64,000 nt of DNA from Scyliorhinus canicula. Its lineage: Eukaryota. The notes beneath the pieces are model-generated. The model saw only the letters and a program-made list of their open reading frames with translations. It did no database searches and was not told where the DNA came from. Made by a program: the position numbers and the translations under genes. The stretch spans positions 1,045,220 through 1,109,219 of the forward strand of contig NW_024055820.1 of assembly GCF_902713615.1 (NCBI RefSeq), in the 5' to 3' direction. Positions 4,266 through 64,000 of the stretch are shown here, piece by piece. Numbering within the stretch: position 1 is the first letter of the stretch; each line of letters begins with the position of its first letter.

Positions 4266-4599
4266 AAGTATGCTAATGCAGTAATTTTAAAATTTACCTA
4301 CATACAAAAGAGTACAACAGCAAATTATTTAAAGTCTCCAATGTGATCGGTGTAATTAGTATGAAATGTAACCAGGAATGGTCATTAAAAGTTTCCCAGT
4401 CACTCTGATATCTGAAATCTTTGTCCTCAGACAGAACAGACAAACCATTTTACCTCCCAATGATATTCAGGTCCTGATGAATCGAGTAACTCAGTCAGAT
4501 GATGATGTGATGTTTGATTTGAAGTTCCCGTTGGCAAATCCTCCTCTTTCTAAAGGAATTTCCAAAGGAATTTCACTCTCAGTCCTGGAGAGAAATTCA

Positions 4600-4970
4600 G
4601 CAGATTCTCTCTTCTGGCTTCCGGTTCCTGGATGCCCGCGCACGCGCCGTGCTGCACATTTCCGCTGAGAAAGATGGCGGACGCGCAGGCGCCCTGCGGC
4701 ATATCGCCCCCCCCCCCCAAAACAGATGACAGCTGTTGACAGGGCCGATCTGAATAATAGCGGATATGTGCACCCAGAATGCCGGGCGCGGAGGAATACG
4801 CCCTATTTCCATCACAGGAACCAGAACGCGCAGGCGCCAGTATGCCCCACCCCCGAAAGTCTCCTATCTGTGCGGAGCAGGCGAGGTGCTGCTCGGGGCT
4901 GAGCGCAGCCGCAGTGAGTGTGGCTCCCGGAGGCTGAATGAGAGCCGCCGCGAGCGGGGACAATGGTGAG
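4600..4970. promoter_or_regulatory. CpG-island promoter/first exon, probably bidirectional
   Basis: CpG-rich; ETS-like cttccgg, NRF1-like gcgcacgcgc, YY1 aagatggcgg, donor-like gtgaga near 4966; paralog at 62420-62890. Confidence 0.65.
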
Positions 4971-5267
4971 AACCCAAACCCCCCAATAAGACCCATTGGT
5001 TTTATTGTCAGTCGGCAGACAGGAGCTGGAGAACTGAACCCAGGCAGAGGAGAGGGAGGGAGAAAACTGGGAGTGGAGGAAAGAAATGGTGCAGATGGTG
5101 AGATGGGTTTGGATTTCAGCCCAGGGAGGAGGGACAGTGTGTGGGACGGGAATTTACAGTTTTGGGGGAACAAGAGAGGAAATTTTTTTTCCAGAGAAAC
5201 TAGAATTGTCTGTTCATAATTTCTATCCTGGACTGACAGTGATGGCTTTTGTAAACTCCTTTTACAG

Positions 5268-5811
5268 GATATTAGAAGTGGAGAATTGGCCGACAGAAAA
5301 CCCAAACCAAACATCACATCGAAATCTGACAGTCACTCTTTTCATTAGGAGCTGAATATGATCAGTCTTTGAATTTGGAGTGAAAAATGTTTGTTCTGTT
5401 TCAGCAGTGTGACTGCAAAAGCACCCGAGTGTTCCAATGAACTAACTGTGGAGAGAGCTTTAACTAGTTACACATCCTCAAAAAAAGTATCACACCATTC
5501 ACTGCAGGGAGAAATTATACGCATGTTTTGTGTGTGGACAAGGTTTCAACCGGGAGAGACACTCTCACCATGGAGAAACCGTGGAAATGTGCAGACTGTG
5601 GGAGGGATTTAGTTACCCATCACAACTGGAAATTCATCGGCACAGTCACACTGGGGAGCGACCATTCAGCTGCTCCATTTGTGGGAAGGGATTCACTCTT
5701 CTGAAACGCCAGCGAGTTCACACTGAGGAGAGGCCATCCAACTGTTATGTCTGTGGAAAGAGATTTACTCAGTCATCCCACCTGCTAACACACCAGCGAG
5801 TTCACAAGTGA
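5268..5811 (+). pseudogene. C2H2 ZNF pseudogene (conserved leader plus ~3 fingers, frameshift and deletion)
   Basis: Acceptor ttttacag|gatattagaag; ATG 5570 MEKPWKC then frameshift; HTGERPF linkers; ends HQRVHK*. Confidence 0.85.
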
Positions 5812-6741
5812 CGACAAGGTTTAGATTATACCCTTATTGATGCTGTTAGTCATGTACAGGACTGAATAATGTTCACTCTGACAGTCTTAATCTGCTGATG
5901 AGGTTTATTATCCTGAATAAACGTAAAATAAATCAACTTTGTTTAAAACGTTGTTGCAGATTTTTATCTTTCCCACCTGAGTGTTTAACATCACCTGCCT
6001 GGAGCTCAGAAAGGACAATCTGGGGGAGGATCACACAGCAGGAACAGAACTTCAGCCTGGACACAGTCCTTCAGGGTCACACTGAGAGGGACAAATGACA
6101 CTTTGCCCTTTCTCACCTCTCTTCACTGTCAGCAAAGTACCCGTGTGGGTTAATCCTGAGGCGTGTAAGAAATGTGTCCCAATCACTCTCTTCCCTATCT
6201 CAGAGCTCCTGGACATAGAACAGAAACTCCTTTACAATTGTGTTTCGAGTCAGGAAGAACAATGGTGAATGCTGGAAATGTGCTGTCAAATCAGAGATTG
6301 GTGGGAAACTGTGATGTTCTTGATTGAATGTAAAACAGCTAGTTTAAGTTTGTGTGACAGTCACAATGAATTAATTGAATAGAAACCTACTTAAAATAGA
6401 TTGGTTGAAGTCTGCGTTAAAATAGCAGCTGTTAACTGCTGGGACAATTAGACAATAGTTTGATTCTTGGATAAAGAAGCTCCAGTGTGTGTCCAAGAAC
6501 TCCCAGTTTTATTGATGTGTGATTCCCATATTCTGTCCTTATAAATAAACCTCAGCCCTATGGGCCTTTAACAATCAGAAACATAACAGAGAAAAGGGTG
6601 AAGCTGTGTCTGCCCCTTTAACTGGATGCTGAGCAGTGTCAGAGCCCCGACTGTCCCTTTAAGACTGAGTGATGTGTTCAGCTGAAGATTCCTCTTGGCT
6701 GTTTTCTGGGTGGTCTCCTTATTCTGATCATTCTCAGTGAT

Positions 6742-6890
6742 TGGGTTGGATTTGTTTATTGTCACGTGTACCGAGGTACAGTGAAAAGTATTTTTCTGCA
6801 AGCAGCTCAACAGATCATTCAGTACATGGAAGAAAAGGAAATTAAACAAAATTCAAGAAAATACATAATAGGACAACACAAGATATCCTC
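6742..6890 (-). mobile_element. Rex1/Babar-type LINE 3' end
   Basis: ttggatttgtttattgtcacgtgtaccgaggtacagtgaaaagtatt matches the 3' end of the 31662-32468 element. Confidence 0.7.
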
Positions 6891-6899
6891 GGGTATGTG

Positions 6900-10475: not shown

Positions 10476-10609
10476 GCCCCTTTTGCTGTTTCTCCTCTGG
10501 GCCCCATCTCCACTATTATTGTCTGATTGTCCCACTGAGACTCTCACTGTTATTATTGGACAATCAGCGAGTCAGCCTGAGCCTGTGGCCGCTCTCACCA
10601 TCTGGAACC

Positions 10610-11000
10610 GTCACAATGCCCGGGTGATTGACGGCAGCTCCGGACCAATAGGAAGAGGAGAGGCGGGTCTGGAGGATGACCGGGAGCGGCAGGTCCTCCA
10701 ACCAATCGGAGTGAATGAGGGGCGGGGCCCGCTGTGATTGGAGCATGCGCAGTGTGGGTAATGGCGAAGGAGAAGGGATGTGTCTTCAGATCGGAAATTC
10801 GTTCGGGGCGTTTAACAACATGGAGGGAGCGAGAGATGGCGGGGGTGGGCGGAAACGTTGTGTGAAGCTGTTGTGAGCTGCAATCCTCGGTAAAGCGTTT
10901 TCTGGACCCCGTTTGTACCGGGCGGAGCTGCAGCTCCTCATTTCGACTCGGTTTAACGACCGCCATCTTTATTGGATGTGCATCAGGGCGCATGCGCGTT
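10610..11000 (+). promoter_or_regulatory. CpG promoter of the ZNF gene at 12322
   Basis: gtgattgacggcag, two CCAAT, ggggcggggc, ggagcatgcgcagtg, YY1 cgccatcttt (10961), NRF1 gcgcatgcgc (10988-10997). Confidence 0.7.
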
Positions 11001-11464
11001 TCTCATCATTGTCGGGCGATGTTTCAATGAGTGGGAGGGGCTTGTTCCCCATTGTTCAGAATGGAGACAACTTGTCCATCAAACTGGATTAGTCTGAGCC
11101 CCAATGTCTTATTGATGATGCAAAGCGGTGGCAAAGATGGAAAGAAAAGGAAGCCAATCCTACTCTCCAGATTTCACTGTCTTATTAATCTTTCTCTCTC
11201 TCTTCCCCTCCCCATAGATCTACATTGTGCTTCAAAAAGAAAATCTCCCTTAATCCCCACACAGAAAAACAGATTTTATCAGAAAATGTCAAAAAACTAT
11301 ATAGAGGTTATCACTTCACCCATCCCACCCCACAGGAAACGTAGATCTTGCCCAATACAGATAACTGGACCCCAGTGAATGCTTTACAGTGAAGCCTCCT
11401 CCTACATTTGCCTCCTCTTCCAGATAGTGAAGGAACAGTGATATATCTCCAAGTCATGATGGTG

Positions 11465-11690: not shown

Positions 11691-12321
11691 GTGGGGCAGT
11701 ACGGTAGCATAGTGGTTAGCACAATTGCATCACAGCCCCTGGGTCCCAGGTTTGATTGTGTGTGAAGTTGGATCAAAGAAAAAAAGGTGTTTTGTGGAGA
11801 AGCAGAACTCTTGCCTCCTTTATTCTACAGCAACCCAGAAGCTCGAAGACAGAGGAAATAATGTTCTACAGGAACTAGAATTGTCCGTTCTGAATTTTTA
11901 TCCTGTACTAACAATGATGACTTTTGTAAATTGTTTTTAAAGGATATTGGAAAAGGAGGAATTATAGACAGAAATCTCAAAGATCACGTCTCGATGCGAC
12001 AAACTCACTCGATTTCTTCTGATCAGAATATTTTTGGGCTCTGAATATCATCGGTGAGAAGGAGAAATATTTGTCCGATCTGTCGGCTTCAAAATATTTT
12101 AAACGTGAGTGACTGGAAAAGCACCTGACCCACACAACACACACCCAAGTGAGAGTGTTCCAGTGAACTGACTGTGGAAAGAGCTTAAACCAGTTACACA
12201 GCCTGAAAAAACATCACACCATTCACAGTGAGGAGAGACAGTGCACATGTTGTGTGTGGAGGATACGGGGCAAGGCTTCCACTGATTGTCCAATCTGGAG
12301 ATTCACGAGGAGACCCAAAAC

Positions 12322-13272
12322 ATGGAGAAACCGTGGAAATGTGGGGACTGTGGAAAGGGATACGGATTTCCATCTGAGCTGGAGACTCATCGACGCATTC
12401 ACACTGGAGAGAGGCCGTTCACCTGCTCTCACTGTGAGAAGTGTTTCACTCGGTTATCCACCCTGCAGGCACACCAGCGAGTTCACACTGGGGAGAGACC
12501 ATTCACCTGTTCTCAGTGTGGGAAAGCATTCAGTGACTCAGCCACACTGCAGAGACACCAGCGAGTTCACACTGGGGACAAACCATTCACCTGCTCCCTC
12601 TGTGGGAATGGATTTGCACAGTTATCCACCCTCCAGACACATCAGCGAGTTCACACTGGGGAGAGGCCATTCACCTGCTCTCAGTGTGGGAAAGCATTCA
12701 GTGACTCAGCCACCCTGCAGAGACACCAGCGAGTTCACACTGGGGAGAAACCATTCACTTGCTCCCATTGTGGAAATGGATTCACACAGTTATCCACCCT
12801 GCTGTCACACCAGCGAGTTCACACCAGGGAGAGGCCATATACTTGTTCTCAGTGTGGGAAGGGATTCATTAATTCGTCCAACCTGCGGACACATCAGCGA
12901 GTTCACACTGGGGAGAAACCATTTAACTGCTCCCTCTGTGGGAATGGATTCACGCAGTTATCCAGCCTGCAGAAACACCAGCGAGTTCACACTGGGGAGA
13001 GGCCATTCACCTGCTCTCAGTGTGGGAAGGGATTCAGTAATCCGTCAAACCTGCAGACACACCAGCGAGTTCACTCTGGGGAGAGGCCGTTCACCTGCTC
13101 TCAGTGTGGGAAGGGATTTGTTAATTCGTCCAACCTGCTGAAACACGAGCGAGTTCATACTGGGGAGAAACCATTTATCTGTTCCCTCTGTGGGAATGGA
13201 TTCTCACAGTTATCCAGTCTGCAGACACACCAGCGAGTTCACACTGGGGCGAGGTCATTCACCTGCTCTTAG
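12322..13272 (+). CDS. Tandem C2H2 zinc-finger protein, 11 fingers (type A, starts MEKPWKC), 3'-truncated
   Basis: 11 CxxC-x12-HxxxH with TGE(R/K)PF linkers. TAG replaces CAG in finger 12, just before a CR1 insertion. Acceptor near 11942. Confidence 0.85.
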
Positions 13273-13286
13273 TGTGGGAAGGGATT

Positions 13287-15645
13287 ACATAGAAAATAGG
13301 AGCAGGAAGAGACCTGTTGGTCCTTCACACCTGCTCCGCCATTCATTATGATCATGGCTTATCATCCAACTCAATAGCCCAATCCCGCTTTCCCCTCCAT
13401 ATCCTTTGATCCCCTTTGCCCTAAGTGCTATATCTAACTGTTTCTTGAAAACATACAATGTATTGGCCTCAACTATTTCCTGAGGTAACAAATTCCACAG
13501 ACTCACCACTCTCTGATGAAGAAGTTTCTCCTCATCTCTATCTTAAATGGTCTTCCCCGTATCCTCAGACTGCGACCTCTGGTTCTGTACACTCCCATCA
13601 TCGGGAAAATCTTTCCTGCATCTACCCTGTCAAGTCCTGTTGGAATATTATAGGTTTCTATGAGACCCCTCATTCTTTTGAACTCCAGTGAATACAAACC
13701 TAACTGATTCAATCTCTCGTGTGTCTGCCCCACCATCCCAGGAATCAGTCTGGTAAACCTTCGCTGCACTCCCTCTCAAGCAAGAACATCCTTCCTCCGA
13801 TAAGGAGACCAATACTGCTCACAATATTCTAGGTATGGCCTCGCCAAGGCCCTATATAATTGCAGCAAGATATTCCTGCTCCTGTACTCGAATCCGCTTG
13901 CAATGAAGGCTAGCATACCATTTGCCTTCTTTACCGCCTGCTGTATGCTTACCTTCAGTGACTGGTGTACAAGGATAACAAGGTCTCGTTGCACATTCCC
14001 CTCTCCTAATCTATGGCCATTCAGCTAATAGTCTGTCTTCTTCTTTTTGGTACCAAAGTGGATAACCTCGCATTTCTACAAATTATATTGCATCTGCCAT
14101 TCATTTGCCCACTCACTCAACTTGTCCAGATCACACTGAAGGATCTCTGCATCCTCTTCACAGCTCACCCTCCCACGCAGCTTGTGTCATCTGAAAATTT
14201 GGAGATATTGCATTTTGTTCCCTCATCTAAATCGTTAATAGATAAGGTGGTGCAGTGGTTAGCACTGCTGCCTCACGGAGCTGAGGACCAGTGTTCAATC
14301 CGTGCCACTGTCCATGTGGAGACAAGTTATCCCCGTGTCTGCGTGAGTCTCACCCCATAATCCAAAGATGTGCAGGGTAGGTGAATTGGCCACGCTAAAT
14401 TGCCCCTTAATTGGAAAACAATAATTGGGTATTTTACATTTTTTTTGCAAATCATTAATATATCTTGTGAATATCTGGGGTCTGAGCACCGAACCCTGCG
14501 GTACCCCACTAGCCACTGCCTGCCAATTTGAAAAAGACCATTAATTCCTACTCTTTATTTCCTGTCTGCCAACCAATTTTCTACCTATCTCAACACACTA
14601 CCCCAAATCCCATGTGCTTTAATTTTACACACTAATCTCTTATGCGGGACTTTGTCAAAAGCCATCTGAAAGTCCAAATATACCACATCCACTGGCTGCC
14701 CCTCGTCAACTCTACCAGTTACACCCTCGAAGAATTCCAGTAGATTTGTCAAGTATGATTTCTCCTTCATAAATCCATGCTGACACTGTCCGATCCTGCC
14801 ACTGTTTTCCTAATGCTTTGCTCTAAAATCTTTGATCATGGATTCTGGAATTTGGCTGATGTCAGGCTTACTGGTCTATAATTCCCTGTTTTCTCTCTAT
14901 CTCGCTTTTTAAATAGTGGAGTTACATAAGCCACCCTCCAATCTGCAGGAACTGTTCCAGAGTCTATAGAATCCTGGAAGATGACCACCAATGCTTCCAC
15001 TATTTCTAGAGCCACTTCCTTAATTACTTTGGGATGCAGATTCTCAGGCCCAGGGGATTTATCAGCCTTCAATCCCATCAATTTTCCCAACACCATTTCT
15101 CTCCTAATATTGATCTCTTTTCAGTTCCTCCCTCTCACTAAATCCTGCATTCACCAACATTTCTGGTATCTGATTTGTACCCTCATTTGTGAAGACAGAA
15201 CTAAAGTATGTATTTATTTGCTCAGCCATTACTTTGTTCCCTATTATACATTCCCCTGTTTCTGACTGGAAAGAACCTACATTTGTCTTCATCAATCTTT
15301 TTCTCTTCATATATCTATGCAAACCTTTACAACCAGCCTAATTTCCTGTTTTGTGCCATTCCCAATATCACCACTGCAGTTTGGGCGTCTATATACGATG
15401 CCCATTAATTTCCGTACCACTTGGTGTTTCTCAGCTCAACACCATACAGATTCCACATTGTCGGAGCTAATATCCTTCCTCACTATTGCATTAATTTCCT
15501 GTTTAACCAGCACTGCCTCTCCACTGCCTTTTCCTTTTTGTCTGTCCTTCCTAAATACTGAATATATTCAGTTCCCATCCCTGGTCATCCTGCAGCCATG
15601 CCTCCATAATCCCGATTATCTCACACCCGTTCACGTCTGTTTGCG
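13287..15645 (-). mobile_element. CR1 LINE (RT region to 3' end), decayed, with nested SINE at 14245-14450
   Basis: KSPGP, NYRPVSLTS, VYLDFQMAFDKVPH, SGVPQGSVL, LEYCEQYWSP, TRGR motifs; flanked by gatt/gatt inside the ZNF array. Confidence 0.9.
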
Positions 15646-15646
15646 C

Positions 15647-16020
15647 GATTCACTCAGTTATGCCGTCTGCAGTCACACCAGGGAGTTCACACTGGGGTGA
15701 GGCCGTTCACCTGCCCTCAATGTGCGAAGGGGTTTTGTAATTCATCGCACTTTTTAAAAATATAAATTTAGACAACCCAATTCATTTTTTCCAATTAAGA
15801 GGCAATTTAGCGTCGCCAATCCACTAACCCTGCACATCTGTAGGTTGTTGGGGCAAAACCCAGGCAAACACAGGGAGAATGTGCAAACTCCACACGGACA
15901 GTGACCCAGGGCCGGGATCGAACCTGGGATGTCGGCGCTGTGAGGCAGCAATGCTAACCACTGCGCCACCGTGCTGCCCACTTCATCGCACTTTCTGAGA
16001 CACCAACAGGTTCACAACTG
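15647..16020 (+). pseudogene. Detached last two fingers of the 12322 gene, split by a SINE (15754-15981)
   Basis: Resumes gattcactcagttatgc...cacactggggtgaggccgttcacctgc; SINE TSD ttcatcgcacttt; ends caggttcacaactga. Confidence 0.85.
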
Positions 16021-46359: not shown

Positions 46360-46559
46360 TTGCTGTTATGGGTGGCATGGTAGCACAATGGCTAGTTAGC
46401 ACTTCTGCCGAAAGATTAGGTAGGGTAACTGGTTTACAGGGATAGTGTGGAGGCGTGGGCCTAAGTCGGATGCTCTTTCCAAGTGCTGGTGCAGACTCAA
46501 TGGGCCGAATGGCCTTCTGCACTGTCGTGCTTCCATGATTCACTCATTGAAAACTTTGC

Positions 46560-46970: not shown

Positions 46971-46971
46971 A

Positions 46972-50079: not shown

Positions 50080-50430
50080 AGAAAGCCCCCTATCTACAAT
50101 ACAGGGGACCGGGATGCGTGCGCAGTCTCACACAGTTTGGAGCATGCACAGAGTGAGTGATGACGCTGAACAGAGGTTGGTTTGTTGCTCGGCCGCCGGT
50201 GAGAGGCGGCGGAGGGGAAGCGGCGGGTGGGTGGAGCGGGTTCATTAACACTCAGTGTGGGCCACAAACCCCGAATAATAACCTGCAGGTCCCACGGTTC
50301 CAGCACTGAAACTTTCCCGGAAATAGGCCCAGGTTAAAGGCCACCATCTTCATTCCGTGGCGAACACGGTGTCTGAGGGGCCATGGTGGTGACGCAGAGA
50401 GTGGGCGGGGCTTCTGGGTCCTAGTGACCA
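50080..50430 (+). promoter_or_regulatory. CpG promoter/first exon of the 51081 pseudogene
   Basis: CpG-rich; ggagcatgcacag; ttcccggaa; followed by the family intron module at 50480-50705. Confidence 0.55.
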
Positions 50431-50706
50431 GGAGAGAAAATGATTGTATCGCTGATTTTGTTCTCACTCTGCCCAGAACTGCATCCAGGCAGAGGGGAGG
50501 AAGGGGGGAAAATTTTGGAGTTGAGGAAATAAATGGTGAGATGGGTTTGAATTCAGCCCAGGGAGGAGAGAATGTGTGCGGGATAGGGATTTACAACTTT
50601 TGGGAAAAAAAGACAGGAAAAATATTCCATAGAAACTAGACTTGTCTTTTCTGTGTTTCTGTGCTCTACACTTGATGTGAAACGTTTTGTAATCTGCTTT
50701 TCCAGG

Positions 50707-51620
50707 CTATTCGAAGGGGGAGATAACTGAAGAGGACAGGAAGGAACATCATTGCAAGATCTGACAAGATTTATCCAGATCTGAATATTTTTTTAAGGAA
50801 GAAGGATCTGAATAACATTGGCCTTTGAATGTGGAAGGAGAAACATTTGGTTGTTCTGTCCGTGGGAGAAGATTTCAAACACCAGTGTTCTTGGAAAATA
50901 ACCGACACACGTACACCTGAGGGAGAGTGTTCCAGTGAACTGACTGTGGAAAGAGCTTTAACCAGTTCACAGTCTATAAAAAATCACACCATTCACAGTG
51001 AAGAGAAACTGTAAATGTGATCTCTGTGATAATACTTAAATTGATCATCTAACCTGCAAAGACAGGAAGATACAGGCACCATGGAGAAACCGTGGAAATG
51101 TGACGACTGTGGGAAGGGATACAATTATCCATCCCGGCTGGAATACCACTGACGCACTCACACTGGGGAGAAGCTGTGGAACTGTGGGGATTGTGGTAAA
51201 CGATTGAATTCTCAATACCAGCTGGCAAACCATCAACGTAATCACACTGGGGAGAGGCCATTCACCTGTTCTCTGTGTGTGAAGGGATTTACCCAGTCAG
51301 CCTGTCTCATGTCACACCAGCGATTTCACACGGAGGAGAGGCCCTTCAGCTGCACCGACTGTGGAAAGAAGTTCAGGCATTCATCCCACCTCAGTAAACA
51401 CCAACGTGTTCACACAGGAGAGACTGTTCACCTGCTCAGTATGTGGGAAGGGATTCACTCAGTCAGCCAACCTGGTGGTACACAAGCAAATTCATACTGG
51501 GGAGAGGCCATTTAGCTGCACTTCCTGTGGAAAGAGGTTAAAGTCGTCATCTGAACTAACTGCACATCAGCGGGTTCACACAGGGGAGAAACCATTCACT
51601 TGCTCTGTGTGTGGGAATCC
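50707..51620 (+). pseudogene. C2H2 ZNF pseudogene (type A): stop in finger 1, frameshift, truncated by a LINE
   Basis: ATG 51081 MEKPWKC; TGA 51150-51152 (paralogs have CGA); frameshift near 51420; ~6 fingers; Rex1 begins inside finger 7. Confidence 0.88.
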
Positions 51621-52557
51621 CTGTACACACACGGCTGTGTGGCAAAATTTGGCTCCAAATCTATCTACAAGTTTGCTGATGACACGACCATAGTGGGTCG
51701 GATTTTGAATAACGATGAATCAAAGTATAGGAGGGAGAAAGAGAACCTCGAGGAGTGGTGTAACAACATAATCTATCCCTCAATGTCACCAAAACTGAGG
51801 AGCTGGTTATTGACTTCAGGAAGCAAAGTATTGTACACACCCCTGTCTGCATCAATGGTGCCCAGGTGGAAATCGTTGACAGCTTCAAATTCCTAGGTGT
51901 GCACATCACCAACAATCTGTCCTGGTTCAACTACGTCAATGCTATGACCAACAAAGCACAACAGCGCCTACATTTTCTCAGGAAACTAAGGAATTTTGGC
52001 ATGCCCACATTGACTCTCACCAATTTTTATAAATGCACCTTCAAAAGCATCCTATCTGGCTGCATCACAGCCTGGTATGGCAACTGCTTGTCCCAAGTCA
52101 GTAAGAAACTACTGAGAGATGTGAGCACAGCCCAGTTCATCGCGTGAACTGCCTCCCATTCATTGATTCTGTCAACACCTCCCGCTGCCTTGGGAAGATG
52201 GGCAGCAGAATTAAAGATCCCTCCCACCCGGGTAGTTCTCTCTTCCAATCTCTTGCATCGAGCAGGAGATACAAAAGTCTAAGAACGCGAACCAACAGAT
52301 TCAAAAACAGTTTCTTACCCGCTGTTACCAAATTCCTGAACGACCCTCTTATGAACTGAACTGATCTCTTCACGCATCTTCTCTGCTGAGTAGTACTGCA
52401 CTCTGTATGCTTCACCCGATGTCTATGTCTGTGTATTTACTTTCTGTATTTATCGTATCTGCTACGTTTTTCATGTGTGGAATGAACTATCTGGACTGTA
52501 CGGAGAACAATACTTTTCATTGTACCTCGGTACACATGACACTAAATCCAAATCCAA
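51620..52557 (+). mobile_element. Rex1/Babar-type LINE, 5'-truncated, followed by (TA)n
   Basis: [36 protein letters not shown]. Confidence 0.88.
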
Positions 52558-53914: not shown

Positions 53915-55120
53915 TTACTTGTGGCCTCGTTGGTGTTTCAGCAGGTTGGATGAAATGGTGAATCCCTTCCCACACTTGGAGCAGATAAACGGTCTCTCCC
54001 CAGTGTGAACTCGCTGATGTACAGTGAGGCTAAATGACTGCGTGAATTCCTTCCCACATTGGTCGCAGGCGAATGGCCTCTCCCCAGTGTGAATTCGCTG
54101 GTGCTTCTGCAGGCCGGATGACCGAGTGAATCCCTTCCCACACTTGGAACAAATGAATGGTCTCTCCCCAGTGTGAATTCGCTGGTGCCTCTGCAACACA
54201 GATAACTGAGTGAATCCCTTCCCACATTGGGCGCAGGTGAATGGCCTCTCCCCTGTGTGAACTCGCTGATGTACAGCGAGGGCAGATGATTGTCTGAACC
54301 CAGTGCCGCAGTGAGAGCACCTAAACGGTTTCTCGTCAGTTTGAACACACTGATGGCGAATCAGTTCCCCAGAACGTTTATAGCACATCCCGCAGTCTGG
54401 ACATTGAAATGGTCTCTCCCCAGTGTGAATTCGCTGATGTACAGCGAGGTTAGATGATCGTCTGAACCCAGTCCCGCAGTGAGAGCACCTGAACGGTTTC
54501 TCGTCGGTGTGAACACACTGATGGCGCATGAGTTCCCCGGAACTTTTGTAGCACTTCCCACAGTCTGGACATTGAAATGGTCTCTCATCAGTGTGAACTC
54601 GCTGGTGACTCAGCAGGTGGGATAACTGAGTGAATCTCTTCCCACACTTGGCGCAGGTGAATGGTCTCTCTCCAGTGTGAACTCGCTGATGTACAGTGAG
54701 GTGAGATGATTGTCTGAACCCAGTCCCGCAGTGAGAGCACCTGAACGGTTTCACGTCAGTGTGAACACGTTGATGGCACATCAGATCCCCAGAACGTTTG
54801 TAGCACTTCCCGCAGTCTGGACATTGAAACGGTCTCTCCACAGTGTGAACTCGCTGGTGTCTCAGCAGGTCAGATGACTGAGTGAATCCCTTCCCACACT
54901 TGGAGCAGGTGAATGGTCTCTCCCCAGTGTGAATGCGCCGATGAGTTTCCAGCTGGGATGGGTAAGTGAATCCTTTCCCACAGTCCACACATTTCCACGG
55001 TGTCTCCTCAGTGTGACTGCATTTGTGGCTTGTGAGGCCTGATGATCCGGTGAATCCTTGTCCACACACACAACACGTGTATGGTTTCTCCCCACTGTGA
55101 ACGATGCTTTTTCCTTCCAT
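53915..55120 (-). CDS. Tandem C2H2 zinc-finger protein, 14 fingers (one lacks the last His) (type B, starts MEGKSIVHS)
   Basis: 14 finger repeats, ends HQRGHK*; acceptor tttcacag near 55229. Confidence 0.92.
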
Positions 55121-55524
55121 GTTCAAAGTACGATGATATTCAGGATATGATCAATTGAGGACTCTGTCAGATCCTGATGTGATGCTTGGTTTGAGTTTTC
55201 GGACTTTGAAGCCTCCCCTTCGAACACCCTGTGAAACTGATTGAAAACAGAAAATAGGGAGCGAGAGAGAACCCACAAAAACACAAAGGCAGGTTGTGAA
55301 ATTTAGCTGAATGAATCTGGTCATTTGTGGGGCCGGCTCTGGGAAAAAGTGACCATGAAAACGGCTGGATTGTCACAAAAACCCAACTGGCCTCTTTGGG
55401 AGGAGAAAGAATGAGGTGAAGAGGGATGTTGTATATCAACAAGACATATTAAGAGAGTAGATGGCAAAGCAAATTCGATCTTGAGCTTCATAAACAGTAA
55501 TATTGATACTGAAACTATGCTTCT

Positions 55525-57503
55525 TGTGGCATAGTGGTTAGCACTGCTGCCTCACAGCTCCAGGGACCCGAGTTAAATTCCCACCCTGACTGTGGAGTTT
55601 GCACTTTCTCCCAGTGTCTGCGTGGGTTTCCACCCAGTGCTCAGGTTTCTTCCCACCGTTCAAAGATGTGCAGGTGAGGTTGAATTGGTTAGGATTGTAT
55701 TCGCTGGAGTTCAAAAGAATGAGGGCGGATCTCATAAAAACCTATAAAAAGTTGGTGGCACGGTGGCGCAGTAGTTAGCCTCATGTCGCCGAGGACCCGG
55801 GTTCGATCCCAGCCCCGGGTCACTGTCTGTGTGGAGTTTGCACATTCTCCCTGTGTTTGCGTGGGTCTCAACCCCACAAATCTGAAGATGTGCAGGGTAG
55901 GTCGATTGGCCACGCTAAAATTACCTCTTAATTGCAAAAAAAAGAATTGGGCACTCTAAATTTATGTTTAAAATAAAAACAGGGTGAGACAGAGTAGATT
56001 CAGGAAGGATGTTCCAGATAGTGGGTGTGTCCAGAAATAGGGGTCACAGTTTGAGAATACGGGGTAGACCATTTAGGACAGAGATGAGGAGACATTTCTT
56101 CATCCAGAGAGTGGGGAGTCTGTGGAATTTGTCACTACAGGAACTAATTAAAGCCAAACATTGCATGTTTTCAAGAAGCAGTTAGATACAGCACTGAGGT
56201 TGAAGGGGATCAAAGGATATTGGGGAAAGCGGGATTAGGCTATTGAGCCTAATCAGCTCTGATCGTAATAAATGGTGGAGCAGGCTCGAAGGGCCAAATG
56301 GCCTCCTGCTCCTATTTTCTACCTGGCTCCGTATCTATGCATGTAAATGGTCCAGGAGGTATGAGGAAGAATGTTTTTACACAACCAGTGGCAATGACCT
56401 TAAACTTGCTGCCTGTGACGGAGTTTGGAAATAGACACAATAAATTTTACAGTGCACAAGTCAATAAACCTGTGAGGATACGGAGACAGAGCAGGAGAAT
56501 AACTCTGACTAGATTGCTCCAAATAATAATAATATTTATTAGTGTCACAAGTAGGCTTACATTAACACTGCAATGAAGTTACTGTGAAAATCCCCAAGTC
56601 GCCACACTCCGGCGCCTGTTCGGGTACACAGAGGGAGAATTCAATGTGCAATTCACCTAACAAGCACGTTTTTTCGGGACTTGTGGGGGGAAGCCGGAGC
56701 ACCCGGAGGAAACGCACGGGGAGAACATGCAGACTCCGCATGGACAGTGACCCAAGCCGGGAATCAAACCCAGGTCCACGGCGCTGAGAATCAGCAGTGC
56801 TAACCACCGTTCCGATCAAAAAGCTAGCATGGACTCAATGGACTGAATGCCCTTCTCTGCCCATAATTGTTTTCATATTTTAAAATAAATTTAGAGTACC
56901 CAATTCATTTTTTCCAATTAAGGGGCAATTTAGTGTGGTTAATCCACCTACCCTGCACATCTTTGAGTTGTTGGGGTGAAACCCACGTAAACACGGGGAG
57001 AATGTGCAAACTCCACATGGACAGTGACCCAGAGCCAGGATCGAACCTGGGACCTCGGTGCTTTGAGGCAGCAGTGCTAACCACTGTGCCAACATGCTGC
57101 CAGCTCACTCTGACATTTTTGTCTAATCTCGCCTTGTAATTTCACCCCAGGGGGTTCAGATATCACTCCGGTAAATCAGTGCTACACTCCCTCTGAGACC
57201 ATTCTGATTTGGGGGTGATGTTGACTCAGGATTGTGAGTTTCTGCCCTGGGTCTTCATGTGGCTGAACAGAGCCACAGAGCTTTTGACACATGGGACAGG
57301 ACATTCAGGTGTGCAAGATGTGCAGGTTAGGTGGATTGGCCATTATAAAATGCCTTTTGTGTCCAAAATTGCCCTTAGTGTTGGGTGGGGTTACTGGGTT
57401 ATGGGGATAGGGTGGAGGTGTTGACCTTTGGTCGGGTGCTCTTTCCAAGAGCCGGTGCAGACACGATGGGCCGAATGGCCTCCTTGTGCACTGCAAATTC
57501 TAT
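55525..57503. mobile_element. Intronic nest of SINEs and a CR1 3' fragment (55680-56320)
   Basis: SINEs at 55525+, 55755+, 56520-56810-, 56878-57100- and 57315-57503+. Confidence 0.7.
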
Positions 57504-57679
57504 GAGACAGTGAAATCCGGAGAGATTGGCTTCCTTTTCTTTCCACTTCTGCCACCGCTTTGCATCATCAATAAGACATTGGGACTCAAAGACTAATCCA
57601 GTTTGATGGACAAGTTGTCTCCATTCTGCACAATGGGGAACAAGCCCCTCCCACTCATTATGACATCGCCCCGACAAAG

Positions 57680-58085
57680 ATGAGAAACGCGCATGCGCCC
57701 TGATGCACATCCAATAAAGATGGCGGCCGTTAACCCGAGCCCAACATGAGGAGCTGCAGCGCCGCTCGATACAAACTGGGTCCCGTAAACTTTCCGAAGT
57801 TTGCGGCTTGCAAAAGTTTTACACAACGTTTCCGTCCACCCCCGCGATCTCTCGCTCCCTCCATATTGTTAAACGTCTCTTACCAATTTCGGATCTGAAA
57901 ACACAACCCTTCTCCTTCGCCATTACTTACCCACACTGCGCATGCTTCAATCACGCGGGCCGCGCCCTCCATTCACCCCGATTGGTTGGAGGACCAGCCG
58001 CATCATTCGGTCTGCCAGTCCCGCCCCTCCGCCTGCTATTGGTCAGGAGCTGCCGTCAATCACCCGAGCATTGTGACGGTAACAG
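57680..58085 (-). promoter_or_regulatory. CpG promoter of the 55120(-) ZNF gene
   Basis: Inverted copy of 10610-11000; gcgcatgcgc, aagatggcgg, two CCAAT, gccgtcaatcac. Confidence 0.7.
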
Positions 58086-60065
58086 ATTGTGAGAGCAGCG
58101 ACAGGCTCAGGCTGACTCGCTGATTGTCCAATAATAACAGTGAGAGTCTCAGTGGGACAATCAGACAATAATAGTGGAGATGGGGCTCAGAGGAGAAACA
58201 GCAAAGGATTCACTCATTTTGAGAGTAACCAACACAGTGTCTGTTCCCATAATAATTCAGACTGCAGTGTGTAAGTGAACATATCATTGGATCCAAGGTA
58301 GATTAATCAGAGTCCCTGCAATGCAGAAGGAGGCCATTCGGCCCATCGAACCTGCACCGACCCTATGAAATATCATCCTATCTGGGCCAATCTAGGGCAG
58401 CATGGTAGCACAGTGGGTAACACTGTTGCTTCCCAGATCCAGGATCCCAGATAATAATTCTGTCACTGTTATTATTAGACAATAACATGCCTGAAATGAA
58501 AATCGCTTATTGTCACAAGCAGGCTTCAAATTAAATTACTGTGAAAAGCTCCGAGTCGTCACATTCCGGTGCCCTTCGGGGGGTGCTGGTGCGGGAATGC
58601 CTGTTATTCCAATGCTGCTGTGTGTTCCTCTGTCACTGTTATTATTGGACAATAACCTGCCTGTCATTCTAATTCTGGTGTGTGTTACTCTGTCACTGTT
58701 ATCATTAGACAATAATAGGAAGGCAAGATGCAAGGTAGCAATGATAATTTGATGTTTCTGTGTTATAGTCAGTGTCACTGGGAGGTGTGAGATAAAATAG
58801 GAATGGAAACATCATGACAGATGCACGTGTGACTGACTCCACCTGATTGAGAGCTGTTCTACCCAAGGTGAGAGCAATGAGGACATGGAGAACTCCAGGT
58901 ATTTCTGGTATCTGAGGTGCATCTGTAGAGGAACTGAAATCATTCTAGTGGTTCTCGATTTATACAGGAAATATATCTGACAGCTAAAACCAAAGTTTCA
59001 ATCTTCTCTTTGAGACACATTGTGATTGAAAAGATCAAATGTTAAAACATCAGGAGAGGAAAATTCAGACTGTCACAAAGGACATCATTGCTACCTCGCA
59101 GCACAATGGACCCTGGTTCAATTCCAGCCTTGGGTGACTGTCTGTGTGGAGTTTGCACTGTCTCCCAGTGTCTGCATGGGTTTCCTACCACCATTCAAAG
59201 ATTTGCAGCTTAGGTGGATTGGCCATGATCAACTTCCCCTTAGTGTCCAAAAAAGTGTTAGTTAGGTGGGGTGGGATATGATGGGGATTGGGGCTAGGTA
59301 TAGTGCAAACTAAATTCGGCACATCAAGTCTGCACCAGCCCGTACGAAGGGCATCTTAATTAAGCCCGCATCTCCACCCTATCCCCATAACCCAGTAACT
59401 CCGCCTAACATTTTTTGGACACTAAGAACAATTTGGCAGGGCCAATCCATCTAACTTGCACACCTTTGGACTGTGGGAGCATCTGGAGGAAACCCACGCA
59501 GACACTGAGAGAATGTGCAGACTGTGACCCAAGCTGGGAATCGAGCCTAGCGCTGTGAAGCAACAGTGCTAACCACCCAAGGACACCTGAGAATGATCAG
59601 AATAAGGAGACTACTCAGAAAACGGCCAATAGGAATTTTCAGCTGAACACATCACTCATTCTTAAAGGGACAGTCGGGGCTCTGACACTGCTCAGCTCCC
59701 AGTTAAAGGGGCAGACACAGCTCTGTCCTTTTCTCTGTTTTGTTTCTGATTGTTAAAAGCTGAAAGGGGTGAGGTTTATTTAAACGGACAGAATGTGGGA
59801 AGCACATATCAATAAAATTGGGAATTTTTGGATACACATTGGAGCTCCTTCTTTATCTGGGAACCAAACTATTGTCTAATTGTCCCAATAGTTAACAGGC
59901 TCCTGTGAACTGCTCCAGCTGCTATTTTAATGCAGACTTCAACCAATCTATTTTAAGTAGGTTTCTATTCAATTAATTCATTGTGACTGTCACATAAACA
60001 CATTAAAATGTTTCAGACTTATTCAGATGCATTATTTTCAGCCTGGAACTTAAATCTAGCTACTT

Positions 60066-60935: not shown

Positions 60936-61354
60936 GACAGTTGTAAAGGAAACATCTGTTCCATATCTAGGAGCTCTGCACAATTTAAGAGAGTGGCTGG
61001 GACACATTTCCTACATGCCTCAGGATTTAGCCACTTTGCTTTCAGTGAAGAGAGATGAGATAGACCAAAGTGTCATTTGTCCCTCTCAGTGTGACCCTGA
61101 AGGACTGTGTCCAGGCTGAAGCTCTGTTCCTGCCATATGATCCTTCCCTTCTTTCTGAGCTCCAGACAGGTGATGTTAAACACTTAGGTGGGAAAGATAA
61201 AAATCTGCAACAACGTTTCAAACAAAGCTGATTTATTTCACATTTATTCAGAATAATAAACCTTATCAGCAGATATAGACAGTCAGAGTGAACATTATTC
61301 AGTCCTGAGCATAATGAACAGCATCAATAAGGGTATAATCTAAACCTTGTAGTT

Positions 61355-62140
61355 GCTTGTGAACTCGCAGGTGTGTTAGCAATTAGGATGAGTGAGTCAA
61401 CCCCTTTTCACGGACATTACAGGTGAATAGCCTCTCCCCAGTGTGAATTTGATGGTGTTTCAGAAGATAAGATAAATGAGAAAATTCCTTCCCAGAGACG
61501 GAGTAGGTAAAGGGCCTCTCCCCACTGTGAACTCTCTGGTGTGCCAGCTGGTTGGGTGGCTGACTGAATTCCTTCCCACACACAGAGCAGGTGAATGGCC
61601 TCTCCCTAGTGTGAACTTTCTGGTGTGTCAGCAGGTTGGATGAATGAGTGAATCCCTTCCCACATACTGAGCAAGTTAATGGCCTCACTGTGAACCTGCT
61701 GATGTGTCAGAAGGTTGTATGAACATGTGAATCCCTTCCCACATTCAGAGCAGGTGAACGGTCTATCCCCTGTATGAAGTTGCCGGTGTATCAGAAGTTT
61801 GGATGAATTAATGAATCCTTTCCCACAGTCAGAGCAGTTAAATGGCCTCTCCCCAGTGTGAATTCTCTGGTGGTTCAGTAGGGCAGATGGACGGTTGAAT
61901 CCTTTGCCACACACCGAGCAGGTGAATGGCCTCTCCCCAGTGTGAGCATATTGGTGTGTTAATAAATTCTTTTTGTTTTTAAAGCTCTTCTCAGAGTCAG
62001 GTCAGTTAAAAGGTTTGTTATCAGAATGAACAAGTTGATGTGTCTGCAGGTGGGATGACTGAATGAATCCTTTCCCACACAGGGAGCAGGAGAACGGTCT
62101 CTCCCCAGTGTGAATACGTTGATGTGTCAGCAGATCCTTT
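61355..62140 (-). pseudogene. C2H2 ZNF pseudogene, ~9 fingers, leader and start deleted
   Basis: Intron joins directly to DLLTHQRIH; TGA at 62002; frameshift near 61685; TAA at 61383. Confidence 0.88.
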
Positions 62141-62419
62141 TTACATAAGTCATCACTGTGAGTCCAGGATAGAAATTCTGAACAGACAATTCTAGTTCCT
62201 CTGGAACATTTTTTCCTCTCTTGTTCCCCCAAAGCTGTAAGTCCCCGTCCCACACACTCTCCCTCTCCCTGGGCTGAAATCCAAACCCATCTCACCATCT
62301 GCACCATTTCTTTCCTCCACTCCCAGTTTTCTCCCTCCCTCTCCTCTGCCTGGGTTCAGTTCTCCAGCTCCTGTCTGCAGACTGACAATAAAACCAATGG
62401 GTTTTATTGGGGGGTTTAG

Positions 62420-62890
62420 GTTCTCACCATTGTCCCCGCTCGCGGCGGCTCTCACTCAGCCTCTGGGAGCCGCACTCACTCTCACTGCGGCTGCGCTCAG
62501 CCCCGAGGAGCACCGCGCATGCTCCGCACAGAAAGACAGCTTCCGGGGGCGGGGCATACTGGCGCCTGCGCGTTCTGGCTCCTGTGATGGAGAGAGGGCG
62601 TATTCCTCCTCGCCCTGCATTCTGGGTAGCCTTCGCCGCCATTATTCAGTTACGTTCCTCAGGGTGATAAATTGGTTCCGGCACTTTTGATACAGTTCGG
62701 TGTTTGTACCGAATGGGGGGGGGGGGGGGCGCATCGGTAATTTTCTCTCTGATCGGCCCCTGTTAACGGCTGTCATCTGTTTAGGGAGCGATATGCCGCA
62801 GGGCGCCTGCGCGTCTGCCATCTTTCTCAGCGGAAATGTGCAGCAGGGCGCATGCGCGGCCATCCAGGAACCGGAAGCCAGAAAAGAGAA
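62420..62890. promoter_or_regulatory. CpG promoter, inverted paralog of 4600-4970
   Basis: gcgcatgcgc near 62848, ccggaagc, gccatcttt. Confidence 0.65.
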
Positions 62891-64000
62891 TCTTGTACGT
62901 TTCTCTCCTGGACTGAGAATTAAATTCCTTTGGAAATTCCTTTAGAAAGAGGAGGATTTGCCAACGGGAACTTCAAATCAAACATCACATCATCCTCTGA
63001 TTGAGTTACTCAATTCATCAGGACCTGAATATCATTGTGAGGTAAAATGTCTGTTCTGTCTGAGGACAAAGATTTCAGATATCAGAGTGACTGGGAAACT
63101 TTTAATGACCATTCCGGGTTAAATTTGAGACTAATTACACCGATCACATTGGGGAAGTTAAATAATTTGCTGTTGTACTCTTATGTATGCAGGTAAATTT
63201 GAAAATTACCGTATTAGCATAGTTGGCAGCTAAACTGGGCAAACGCTGACCTTGTTAGTAATGAGAGTTACTATCCGGGATTTTATCAAAGTTTGTTGTT
63301 CATGTTGCATTTCATTCAGTTCATTGTGGCTGCAAAGTAGATATTCAGCCCCATCTCAATTTCCAGATTGTGAGGGCAGCACGGTGGTGCAGTGGGTTAG
63401 CCCTGCTGCCTCACGGGACCGAGGTTCGATCCCAGCTCTGGGTCACTGTCCGTGTGGAGTTTGCACATTCTCCCTGTGTTTGTGTGGGTTTTGCCTCCAC
63501 CACCCAAAGATAGGTGGATTGGCCATGCTAAATTGCCCCTTAATTGGAAAAAATTAACTGGGTACTCTAAATTGATATTTTAAAATATTCCAGATTGTGC
63601 TCTGTAGTCTTTTAAGTTACATCAATTCAGATGGCTATCTAAATACTTTTTAAATGTTATGAGGGTTTGTGCCATCATTTCAGGCAGCATGTCACAGATC
63701 CTCACCACCCTCTAAACCTCCTGGTCCTTCCCTAAATATCTGCCCCCTTTTATATGTATCCCTCAACCAAAGGGAATAGGACCTTCCTATCCAATCTATT
63801 TAGATCCCTCAGAATTAAAAAAAATAAAAATTTATATTTTTATCCAATCAAGGGGCAATTTAATTTGGCCAAGCCTGCACATATTTGGGTTGTGGGGGTG
63901 AAACCCACACAGACAATGGGAGAATGTGCAAATTCCTTACAGACTGTGACCCGGGGCTAGGATCGAACCCGGGTCCCCAGCACGTAGGCACACAACCACT

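What the first reader, a model, noticed from the sequence alone, without database searches (positions are those of the whole stretch)
4270..63130. Modular, rapidly turning-over C2H2-ZNF family with no recognisable KRAB in a cartilaginous fish
Seen: eight ZNF loci in 64 kb (5 open, 3 dead) plus orphan modules, all sharing promoter, intron, acceptor, leader and 3' UTR DNA, while finger number (7-14) and recognition-helix residues differ. I recognise no KRAB, SCAN, BTB or SET coding segment, and each ORF lies in one exon. Established: this birth-and-death pattern typifies tetrapod KRAB-ZFP clusters and fish FiNZ-ZNF genes implicated in transposon repression. Inference: an independent chondrichthyan ZNF expansion, possibly TE-recognising, that works without a known effector domain.
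Basis: partly seen in the sequence, partly recalled or inferred. Interest (0 to 1): 0.75.

Follow-up and report, generated by a model that had tools for sequence, protein, structure and literature searches.

The report
Catshark finger-only zinc-finger gene cluster
This 64-kb stretch of a catshark-type genome holds eight copies, about half of them dead, of a shark-and-ray zinc-finger gene family whose proteins are almost nothing but DNA-binding fingers. It is a real and apparently undescribed family, but a variant of the familiar fast-diversifying zinc-finger gene clusters rather than a new kind of system.

Summary
There are eight C2H2 zinc-finger (ZNF) loci. L5 and L7 are clean. L3 and L4 are open with blemishes. 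L2 is open but cut by a nonsense codon and a transposon. L1, L6 and L8 are dead. Seven loci share one splice acceptor and leader. Seven share an NRF1-like promoter core (8 hits against 0.37 expected). No KRAB, SCAN or SET coding segment was found in the window. Relatives' N-termini match no Pfam family.

In every open copy the finger frame is closed by stops between the shared acceptor and the start codon. In L5 and L7 no AG lies between the last stop and the ATG, so no upstream coding exon can join there.

Framework codons are under purifying selection (omega about 0.3). DNA-contact codons run at 0.9-1.2 (Fisher p=0.0014): excess diversification, but not proven positive selection.

- The paralogs look old, not rapidly turning over.
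- The 'orphan modules' are small leader exons with intact splice sites.
- The leader is read as an N-terminal peptide in some gene models of other sharks and rays.

TE targeting is untested. The scan has already found this family on other DNA of this genome.

The parts
4454..4680 (-). It runs from an NRF1-like site to a GAG|GTAAAA donor; the last exon base is 4454.
   Evidence: The S. canicula RefSeq paralog LOC119959604 (P0368, P0369) reads the same kind of exon from the island to that donor.
4451..5267 (+). L1 CpG island, promoter core (4875-4888, 2 mismatches) and shared intron.
5268..6280 (+). L1 main exon, dead: leader, frameshifted constant finger, three finger remnants ending in HK-stop at 5808, then a 3' UTR block shared with L4 and L8.
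10482..11185 (+). L2 promoter island with CCAAT boxes, a GC box and the NRF1-like core (10741-10754). Candidate exon-1 donor after 10757.
11943..13272 (+). L2 main exon: acceptor at 11943, a leader of three fossil fingers (7 in-frame stops), ATG at 12322 (MEKPWKC), 11 fingers, ended by CAG->TAG at 13270.
13288..16234 (.). Retroelement (RT fragments on the - strand) and SINE inserted into finger 12 of L2. Beyond it lie L2's displaced last-finger remnants (15646-15760) and its 3' UTR block (15999-16234).
29974..31432 (-). L3: 3' UTR block (29974-30217), ORF 30218-30976 (8 fingers, last one degenerate), fossil-finger leader, acceptor at 31291, shared intron to 31432. No promoter core was found upstream.
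36601..37571 (+). L4 CpG island, core 37237-37250, candidate donor after 37253, and an intron 93% identical to that of L8.
37572..39050 (+). L4 main exon: acceptor at 37572, fossil-finger leader, ATG at 37932, 11 fingers, stop at 38910-38912, and a 3' UTR block shared with L1 and L8.
42793..43516 (-). L5 main exon: acceptor at 43516, leader with one in-frame TAA, ATG at 43407 ([14 protein letters not shown]), 7 fingers, natural HK-stop.
44971..45090 (-). 120-nt leader exon with an intact acceptor (ttgacag|GATACTGG) and donor (GGAAG|gtaaaa). It lies between the L5 promoter core and the L5 main exon. That it is an internal 5' exon of L5 is inferred.
   Evidence: The S. canicula RefSeq paralog P0357 joins such an exon to a main-exon leader.
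46380..47000 (-). L5 promoter island (diverged copy of the L2/L7 island). Core 46822-46835, candidate donor after 46819.
50140..51690 (+). L6, dead: core 50140-50153 (2 mismatches), acceptor at 50706, leader, array with an in-frame stop and a frameshift, truncated by a LINE tail from about 51700.
53918..55228 (-). L7 main exon: acceptor at 55228, leader with one in-frame TGA, ATG at 55120 ([14 protein letters not shown]), 14 fingers with 168- and 252-bp internal duplications, natural HK-stop.
57502..58205 (-). L7 promoter island (88% identical to the L2 island). Core 57934-57947, perfect donor TGG|GTAAGT after 57931. The 2.7-kb intron is filled with SINEs.
60937..63041 (-). L8, dead; the inverted copy of the L1 unit. 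3' UTR block, frameshifted array 61386-62355, island with core 62511-62524, and on the + strand the divergent leader exon ending at donor 63041.

Best explanation
The window is a piece of an old, transposon-riddled cluster of an elasmobranch-specific family of Krueppel-type C2H2 poly-zinc-finger genes. The organism is a catshark, genus Scyliorhinus by its nearest relatives.

Gene plan:
- A CpG-island promoter with CCAAT boxes, a GC box and an NRF1-like core.
- A very short non-coding first exon.
- An intron of 0.3-3.3 kb, swollen by SINE insertions, sometimes with an extra 120-nt leader exon inside it.
- One large exon holding a non-coding leader, the whole ORF and the 3' UTR.

Protein plan:
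- Essentially fingers only.
- One nearly invariant finger, [17 protein letters not shown][IT]HRRSH, comes first. In L5 and L7 one further finger precedes it.
- Six to twelve variable fingers follow.

Two subfamilies differ in where translation starts:
- In L5 and L7 translation starts at 'LNMEGKS', ahead of that extra finger.
- In L1-L4 and L6 three N-terminal fingers have died and become 5' leader. A new ATG in perfect Kozak context sits in the linker just before the constant finger (TGEKPWKC became TMEKPWKC).

How the cluster changes: segmental and inverted duplication, internal duplication of 1-3-finger units, TE insertion and point decay.

Selection: it keeps the zinc-finger scaffold and lets the DNA-contact residues drift or diversify.

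Inferred, not shown: the proteins are sequence-specific DNA binders. They may act by occupancy, or by recruiting partners through the constant N-terminal finger(s). Repeats are a plausible but untested target class.
For: Loci, frames and lesions.

Acceptor and leader: shared in 7 of 8 loci. Conservation in L5 and L7 stops at the AG.

In-frame stops between the acceptor and the ATG, counted on the sequences printed: L2 has 7, L3 has 10, L4 has 4, L5 has 1, L7 has 1. In L5 and L7 there is no AG dinucleotide between the last stop and the ATG.

Promoter:
- The core has 8 hits against 0.37 expected, in the correct orientation, and a GT donor follows it.
- The L2, L5 and L7 islands align with CCAAT, GC-box and NRF1 motifs.
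- CpG observed/expected is 0.9-1.3 in the islands against 0.42 for the whole window.

No other domain:
- Only zf-C2H2 families hit the five ORFs.
- A KRAB HMM built from 57 fetched KRAB proteins scored at best E=0.067 on the six-frame translation.
- The N-terminal parts of 226 fetched ZNF proteins gave nothing better than E=0.004 outside the arrays.

Selection, on 21 independent finger pairs:
- Omega is 0.30 (0.23-0.41) at non-contact codons.
- Omega is 0.9-1.2 (0.83-1.76) at positions -1, 2, 3 and 6.
- Fisher p=0.0014.

Internal duplications: periods of 84, 168 and 252 bp at up to 90% identity.

Constant finger: across 24 shark and ray sequences, entropy is 0.25 at +1, 0.50 at +5 and 1.7 at -1. 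In 112 downstream fingers the values are 1.7, 2.6 and 3.2.

Family range: sharks and rays.

Indirect expression: 14 small RNA-like assemblies hold 0.23-0.38 of 36500-39500, and 14 hold 0.39-0.52 of 53400-56400, about the size of the main exon.
Against: - The first exons, the use of the acceptor and expression itself are inferred from conservation and from RefSeq models of paralogs.
- The runs are only guessed to be RNA.
- None of the predicted proteins is in the protein collection as an exact sequence.
- In L4 there are 49 open codons and several AGs between the last stop and the ATG, so a cryptic acceptor that joins a coding exon cannot be excluded by sequence alone.
- L3 has no recognisable promoter core.
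- Three to four of the eight copies are dead, so some of the 'open' ones may be on the way out.
- No DNA target or cofactor is known.
Confidence: 0.75

Rival explanations
1. The family does have an N-terminal module. The roughly 40-residue acidic leader peptide, (M)VFEGEDLQTGNSNQTSHQDLTESLDSSGPEYHRPLNMEGKS, starts at the exon junction. On this reading it is a short effector or partner-binding motif, comparable in position and composition to the cyprinid FiNZ domain. The copies in this window would then be members that have lost it.
For: - The peptide is in the CDS, in frame with intact fingers, in RefSeq or UniRef models of Pristiophorus, Heterodontus, Carcharodon, Cetorhinus, Mustelus, Stegostoma, S. 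canicula, Hypanus, Mobula, Pristis and Rhinoraja.
- Two models begin 'MVFEGEDL', which implies a start codon split across the conserved junction.
- In L5 the same frame runs from the acceptor into the fingers with a single TAA.
- Ray proteins share a further upstream peptide, DPKLSG..RPRVVLRRL.
- FiNZ is described as a 28-aa Glu-rich N-terminal sequence with no similarity to known domains (PMC10547256).
Against: - Only 35 cluster representatives among 1.84 billion carry it. Many relatives start at MEGKS or MEKPWKC.
- Gene predictors take the longest ORF, and a 40-codon leader is open by chance fairly often.
- Among the ten leader copies in the window, substitutions show no codon periodicity: 0.88, 1.03 and 1.10 per column at codon positions 1, 2 and 3.
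- Every copy in the window has stops or frameshifts.
- No Pfam family matches at E<=1.
- The Atlas look-alikes scored at noise level.
Confidence: 0.2
2. The cluster is a graveyard. All eight loci are pseudogenes or transcribed relics. The long open arrays persist only because shark DNA changes slowly.
For: - L1, L6 and L8 are broken. L2 is truncated by a stop and a TE. L3 lacks a promoter core and has a degenerate last finger. L4 has G->W in the constant finger.
- 13% of the window is one SINE family (44 pieces), and LINE and MULE relics add to that.
- The exact proteins are absent from the collection.
Against: - Scaffold codons show omega of 0.30, and all Cys and His ligands are intact in 47 of 48 fingers of the open arrays. 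The adjacent leader collects 1-10 stops per copy over 60-130 codons.
- L5 and L7 keep the natural start, the natural HK-stop and the 3' UTR.
- Assemblies from 6-8 studies hold main-exon-sized parts of L4 and L7.
Confidence: 0.12
3. The repeated promoter-leader-array unit is spread by a mobile element and is not a host gene family.
For: - Units occur in both orientations among dense TEs.
- Promoter-island pieces occur without genes, for example at 1787-2222.
- A FLYWCH-MULE transposase relic lies beside L3.
Against: - No terminal repeats or target-site duplications bound the units, and copies differ in their boundaries.
- The units have introns, CpG-island promoters with housekeeping-type motifs and selection on the protein scaffold.
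- Relatives are annotated as ordinary cellular genes in more than 15 elasmobranch genomes.
- L1 and L8 are explained by one inverted segmental duplication that includes flanking SINEs.
Confidence: 0.03

Closest known systems
Tetrapod KRAB zinc-finger protein (KZFP) clusters
   Same: Tandem clusters of Krueppel-type C2H2 arrays with TGEKP linkers. All fingers sit in one 3' exon. The clusters evolve by birth and death with dead copies and internal finger duplication, and change is faster at DNA-contact residues than in the scaffold.
   Different: No KRAB A or B box in the window or in relatives. No coding exon upstream of the finger exon in these copies. The taxon lies outside the sarcopterygians. 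The paralogs look old rather than young.
Cyprinid FiNZ-ZNF genes (Wells et al. 2023, PMC10547256)
   Same: A lineage-specific fish ZNF expansion without KRAB. A short acidic N-terminal sequence of unknown fold is the only non-finger part. In the shark family it is present only in some members' gene models.
   Different: FiNZ is a 28-aa domain on its own exon and is reported as unique to cyprinids. Here the leader sits at the 5' end of the finger exon, is closed by stops in every copy of the window and shows no coding periodicity. No FiNZ sequence was available to compare directly.
Finger-only Krueppel-type proteins (human OZF/ZNF146, Xenopus XlCGF/XlCOF 'gastrula/oocyte zinc finger proteins')
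   Same: Proteins made of C2H2 fingers and linkers with a few flanking residues. NCBI names several shark relatives 'OZF-like', 'XlCGF...-like' or 'ZNF 239-like'. That OZF is finger-only is from my own knowledge.
   Different: Those are single genes, or an amphibian family with its own history. The shark family is defined by its own constant first finger, its fossil-finger leader and its shared promoter core.
The catshark 'finger-only ZNF' family already noted by this scan on other pieces of the same genome
   Same: The same leader of fossil fingers with shared TGA codons, the same constant first finger, the same CpG promoter island with divergent exons, and the same range over sharks and rays.
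   Different: This window adds four things: the L5/L7 subtype that keeps an extra N-terminal finger and an older start codon; leader exons with intact splice sites; a test of contact against scaffold codons; and the point that the leader is translated in some relatives' gene models.

Membership tests
Krueppel-type C2H2 poly-zinc-finger genes | Tandem C-X2-C-X12-H-X3-H fingers joined by TGEKP-like linkers. | tested here: met
   63 fingers by pattern. zf-C2H2 and zf-H2C2_2 score E 1e-48 to 1e-91 in the five ORFs. Linker consensus is TGE[RK]PF.
KRAB-ZFP | KRAB A box (with or without a B box) encoded on exon(s) upstream of the finger exon. | tested here: not met
   The KRAB HMM scored at best E=0.067 on the six-frame window. 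tblastn of KRAB-bearing N-termini found nothing outside the arrays. In-frame stops lie between the acceptor and the ATG. No PF01352 in any shark or ray relative.
KRAB-ZFP | Recruitment of TRIM28/KAP1. | not testable with these tools
   Needs co-immunoprecipitation or a reporter assay.
FiNZ-ZNF | A conserved 28-aa Glu-rich N-terminal FiNZ sequence on its own exon upstream of the finger exon. | tested here: inconclusive
   No coding exon can join in frame in L5 or L7. The leader peptide is acidic and N-terminal in some relatives. No FiNZ reference sequence was returned by any tool, so no alignment was possible. No Pfam hit for the leader.
FiNZ-ZNF | Restricted to cyprinid fish. | tested here: not met
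   The nearest relatives are all elasmobranch. The paper states that FiNZ-ZNFs are unique to cyprinids.
SCAN-, BTB- or SET/PRDM-ZNF | A SCAN, BTB or SET domain N-terminal to the fingers. | tested here: not met
   N-termini of fetched SCAN and PRDM9 proteins gave no hit in the window. Pfam on 28 non-finger ORFs of 74-289 aa found only RT, MULE, FLYWCH and a LINE-tail false family. BTB was covered only by these Pfam scans, not by a six-frame search.
Elasmobranch finger-only ZNF family (scan's working name) | Constant first finger [17 protein letters not shown][IT]HRRSH. | tested here: met
   Present in all of L1-L7. Low entropy across 24 shark and ray sequences against 112 downstream fingers.
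Elasmobranch finger-only ZNF family (scan's working name) | Shared acceptor plus leader, with fossil fingers carrying shared stop codons in one subfamily. | tested here: met

The most novel reading that the evidence does not exclude
The indispensable non-DNA-reading part of this family may be the invariant 'WKC...YPSxLE[IT]HRRSH' finger, not a classical effector domain. That finger has been kept from rays to sharks while everything N-terminal to it was shed step by step: the acidic leader peptide, then three fingers. On this reading one zinc finger serves as the partner-recruiting 'effector' of an elasmobranch repeat-control system that evolved in parallel to KRAB and FiNZ.
Probability: 0.15. 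Interest if true: 0.7.

Novelty: new variant of a known kind. Interest (0 to 1): 0.45.

Why it matters
Large lineage-specific zinc-finger families are thought to track transposons across animals. How they act is known only where a KRAB domain, and perhaps a FiNZ domain, recruits silencing machinery.

Sharks and rays have big, repeat-rich, slowly evolving genomes and no KRAB-ZFPs. A large family that consists of fingers only, has a conserved first finger and has a traceable history of N-terminal loss offers a clean test. The question is whether such arrays need an effector domain at all, or whether a finger can do that job.

For annotation the findings are also practical:
- Gene models of this family in several shark genomes are chimeric or carry leader-derived N-termini.
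- The shared acceptor, the start-codon types and the promoter core found here give rules for re-annotating the family.

Tried and rejected
- The search for homologous proteins with L7, whole and N-terminal region, was swamped by tetrapod KRAB-ZNFs. Only the short L5 query gave a usable elasmobranch list.
- Exact look-up of seven predicted proteins: none is in the collection.
- The look-up of encoding contigs for the S. canicula paralog P0357 gave the gene span (2943 bp) but no DNA.
- The protein-atlas search on the leader peptide scored at most 0.81, which is noise.
- Coding test of the leader by codon-position counts found no periodicity. I therefore dropped the idea that the leader is coding in this window.
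- The weak KRAB-HMM hit at 40759-40905 (10 bits, B-box part only) was rejected as chance.
- The core hit at 47323 (+) has no CCAAT or GC context and follows TE sequence, so it is not counted as a promoter.
- Selenocysteine read-through of the shared TGA in the fossil fingers was considered and dropped, because other stops and frameshifts lie in the same leader.
- Six literature searches found no description of a shark or ray ZNF family.

Full report
**What is there**

A six-frame scan for C-X2-C-X12-H-X3-5-H finds 63 fingers, and all of them fall in eight places. Stop-to-stop frames and start codons define the loci.

| Locus | Strand | Coordinates | State |
|---|---|---|---|
| L1 | + | 5268-5808 | dead |
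| L2 | + | 12322-13269 | 11 fingers, truncated |
| L3 | - | 30218-30976 | 8 fingers |
| L4 | + | 37932-38909 | 11 fingers |
| L5 | - | 42793-43407 | 7 fingers |
| L6 | + | 51045-51690 | dead |
| L7 | - | 53918-55120 | 14 fingers |
| L8 | - | 61386-62355 | dead |

Pfam sees only zf-C2H2-type families in the five open frames. L1 and L8 are the two arms of one inverted duplication, 3353-6737 against 64000-59587, at about 90% identity.

L2 is open only as far as a CAG->TAG change in finger 12. A retroelement and a SINE follow at once (RT fragments). L2's last-finger remnants (15646-15760) and its 3' UTR block lie 2.3 kb further on. That block, 15999-16234, is 79% identical to the L3 3' flank. The tally of '5 open, 3 dead' is therefore right by the letter. 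A fairer count is two clean genes (L5, L7), two open with blemishes (L3, L4), one truncated (L2) and three dead.

**Shared modules**

A MAFFT alignment of the 900 bases upstream of the constant finger shows one 3' splice site in seven loci: a pyrimidine tract, then ttttacag|GATATTAGAAG or tttcacag|GGTATTCGAAG. L8 has lost it. In L5 and L7 the similarity stops at that AG. This is what an exon boundary looks like.

Upstream, the 14-mer GAGCATGCGCRGTG occurs 8 times with up to 2 mismatches, against 0.37 expected. Seven hits lie in the proper orientation, 0.3-3.3 kb upstream of L1, L2, L4, L5, L6, L7 and L8. Each is followed within a few to about 30 bases by a GT donor; in L7 it is TGG|GTAAGT. The eighth hit (47323) sits in TE sequence and is not counted. 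L3 has none.

The islands of L2, L5 and L7 align over about 600 bases and carry CCAAT boxes, a GC box and two NRF1-like palindromes. CpG observed/expected is 0.9-1.3 in the islands against 0.42 overall. The introns of L5 and L7 are long because SINEs were inserted. One SINE family makes 44 pieces, 13% of the window. The 3' UTR blocks are shared by subsets: L1/L4/L8, L2/L3 and L5/L7.

**Gene plan and the question of an upstream coding exon**

From the acceptor to the start codon, the finger frame carries 7 stops in L2, 10 in L3, 4 in L4, 1 in L5 and 1 in L7. In L5 and L7 the 24-30 bases between the last stop and the ATG hold no AG. No acceptor can sit there, and no upstream exon can be joined in frame ahead of that ATG. 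In L4 the last 49 codons before the ATG are open and contain AGs, so a cryptic acceptor cannot be excluded from sequence alone.

Two subfamilies emerge.
- L5 and L7 start at TTGAACATGG ([19 protein letters not shown]) and keep one finger ahead of the constant finger.
- L1-L4 and L6 have three dead fingers in that place, with shared TGA codons, one of them at a Cys ligand. They start at ACCATGG inside the former linker (MEKPWKC).

**No known effector domain**

- A KRAB HMM built from 57 KRAB-bearing proteins returned by the searches scored at best E=0.067 on all six frames.
- tblastn with the N-terminal, pre-finger parts of 226 fetched ZNF proteins found nothing outside the arrays better than E=0.004. 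That set includes KRAB, SCAN and PRDM9-SET proteins.
- Pfam on 28 of the non-finger ORFs of 74-289 aa gave only RT, MULE, FLYWCH and a LINE-tail false family.
- The N-terminal extensions of nine shark and ray relatives match no Pfam family at E<=1.

**The 'orphan modules'**

The three leader-like pieces without arrays are exons.
- 45090-44971 (- strand) has an acceptor and a GGAAG|gtaaaa donor. It lies between the L5 promoter core and the L5 main exon.
- 4454 (- strand) and 63041 (+ strand) are donors that end leader exons. These exons start in the L1 and L8 islands and point away from L1 and L8.

S. canicula RefSeq models of paralogs use just such exons:
- LOC119959604 isoforms run from the island through the leader to that donor.
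- XP_038643830 joins an upstream leader exon to a main-exon leader within a 2.9-kb gene.

This agrees with the head-to-head promoter units reported by earlier follow-ups of this scan.

**The leader as a former N-terminus**

The short L5 query gave elasmobranch relatives. Several read the leader in frame as peptide, with consensus LEGEDLQTGNSNQTSHQDLTESLDSSGPEYHRPLNMEGKS. A profile of that peptide finds 35 cluster representatives among 1.84 billion proteins. Those that I looked up or had seen before are all from sharks or rays. Two begin MVFEGEDL, which implies an ATG split across the conserved junction.

Against a coding role here:
- Every copy in the window is interrupted.
- The ten leader copies show no codon periodicity: 0.88, 1.03 and 1.10 substitutions per column at positions 1, 2 and 3.

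I read the leader as 5' UTR in this window and as a relic of an N-terminal peptide of the ancestral gene. I keep a living N-terminal motif in other members as a rival at 0.2.

**Selection**

In 21 independent pairs of related fingers, non-contact codons have omega 0.30 (bootstrap 0.23-0.41). Contact codons -1, 2, 3 and 6 have omega 0.9 against their own dS, or 1.2 (0.83-1.76) against the pooled dS. Fisher p=0.0014 for the excess of replacement changes.

So the scaffold is kept, which argues for working proteins. Positive selection is not shown either. Pairs were chosen by scaffold identity, which lowers scaffold divergence somewhat.

**Constant finger**

Across 24 shark and ray sequences the finger after 'WKC' keeps Y at -1, P at +1, S at +2, E at +5, I/T at +6 and HRRSH. 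Entropy is 0.25-1.8 bits, against 1.7-3.2 in 112 downstream fingers.

**Turnover**

Internal duplications of one, two and three fingers are visible: periods of 84, 168 and 252 bp, up to 90% identity in L7. But arrays of different loci are only 65-78% identical. L5 is 75-77% identical in protein to basking-shark genes, as close as to any neighbour. I infer an old cluster with slow decay, not rapid turnover. The time scale is inference.

**Expression**

This is the weakest point. Fourteen small assemblies guessed to be RNA hold 0.23-0.38 of 36500-39500, and fourteen hold 0.39-0.52 of 53400-56400. All listed holders together come from 8 and 6 studies. Those shares are about the size of the main exons.

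**Organism**

No tool names it. The nearest proteins are from Scyliorhinus, and earlier follow-ups call the genome catshark.

**Literature**

Wells et al. 2023 (PMC10547256) describe ZNF-TE covariation across animals and the cyprinid FiNZ family. They do not mention sharks in the main text. Six searches found no paper on an elasmobranch ZNF family.

**Verdict**

The finding is real and correctly described in outline. It is a new variant of a known kind. This scan has already met it on other DNA of the same genome.

Noticed in passing
window 28423-29742 (+): A FLYWCH zinc-finger domain (E 2.9e-14) is followed in the same frame by a MULE transposase domain (E 6.7e-9). The two ORFs are 128 and 289 aa, with a break between them. 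This is a Mutator-like transposase relic, or a domesticated copy, just 3' of L3.
   Followed up: partly
window 13288-15340 (-) and 23266-23640 (-); 51764-52365 (+) and 31664-32275: LINE reverse-transcriptase fragments. One is inserted into the L2 finger array. A LINE tail truncates L6, and a copy of that tail lies upstream of L3. The tail gives a spurious ALKBH8_N Pfam hit.
   Followed up: partly
window 36277-36515: A near-perfect 29-bp tandem repeat (8.2 copies, 99% matches) lies just upstream of the L4 CpG island. A 125-bp cryptic repeat at 36750-37150 was noted by another first-stage entry.
   Followed up: no
window 45383-45557 and 27456-27656: Young minisatellites: 55 bp x 3.2 at 99% identity, about 300 bp upstream of the 45090-44971 leader exon, and 65 bp x 3.1 at 97% identity.
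   Followed up: no
window 1787-2222: A partial copy of the L2/L7-type promoter island (85-95% identical), with no ZNF exon within the window. It may belong to a gene beyond the window start.
   Followed up: no
P0315 (Mobula), P0330 (Pristis), P0360 (Rhinoraja); compare P0351 (Carcharodon): Ray members of the family share a further N-terminal peptide, ...DPKLSG(A)xRPRVVLRRLxLPxRNH..., ahead of the leader. It has no Pfam match. It could be a batoid-specific N-terminal module.
   Followed up: partly
P0138 (Pristiophorus), P0303 (Heterodontus), P0230 (S. torazame): Public gene models of this family are often chimeric: a retroelement pol piece plus histone H2A plus fingers; an RT-derived N-terminus; or leader read in a shifted frame. 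The family needs re-annotation.
   Followed up: no
   Followed up: no
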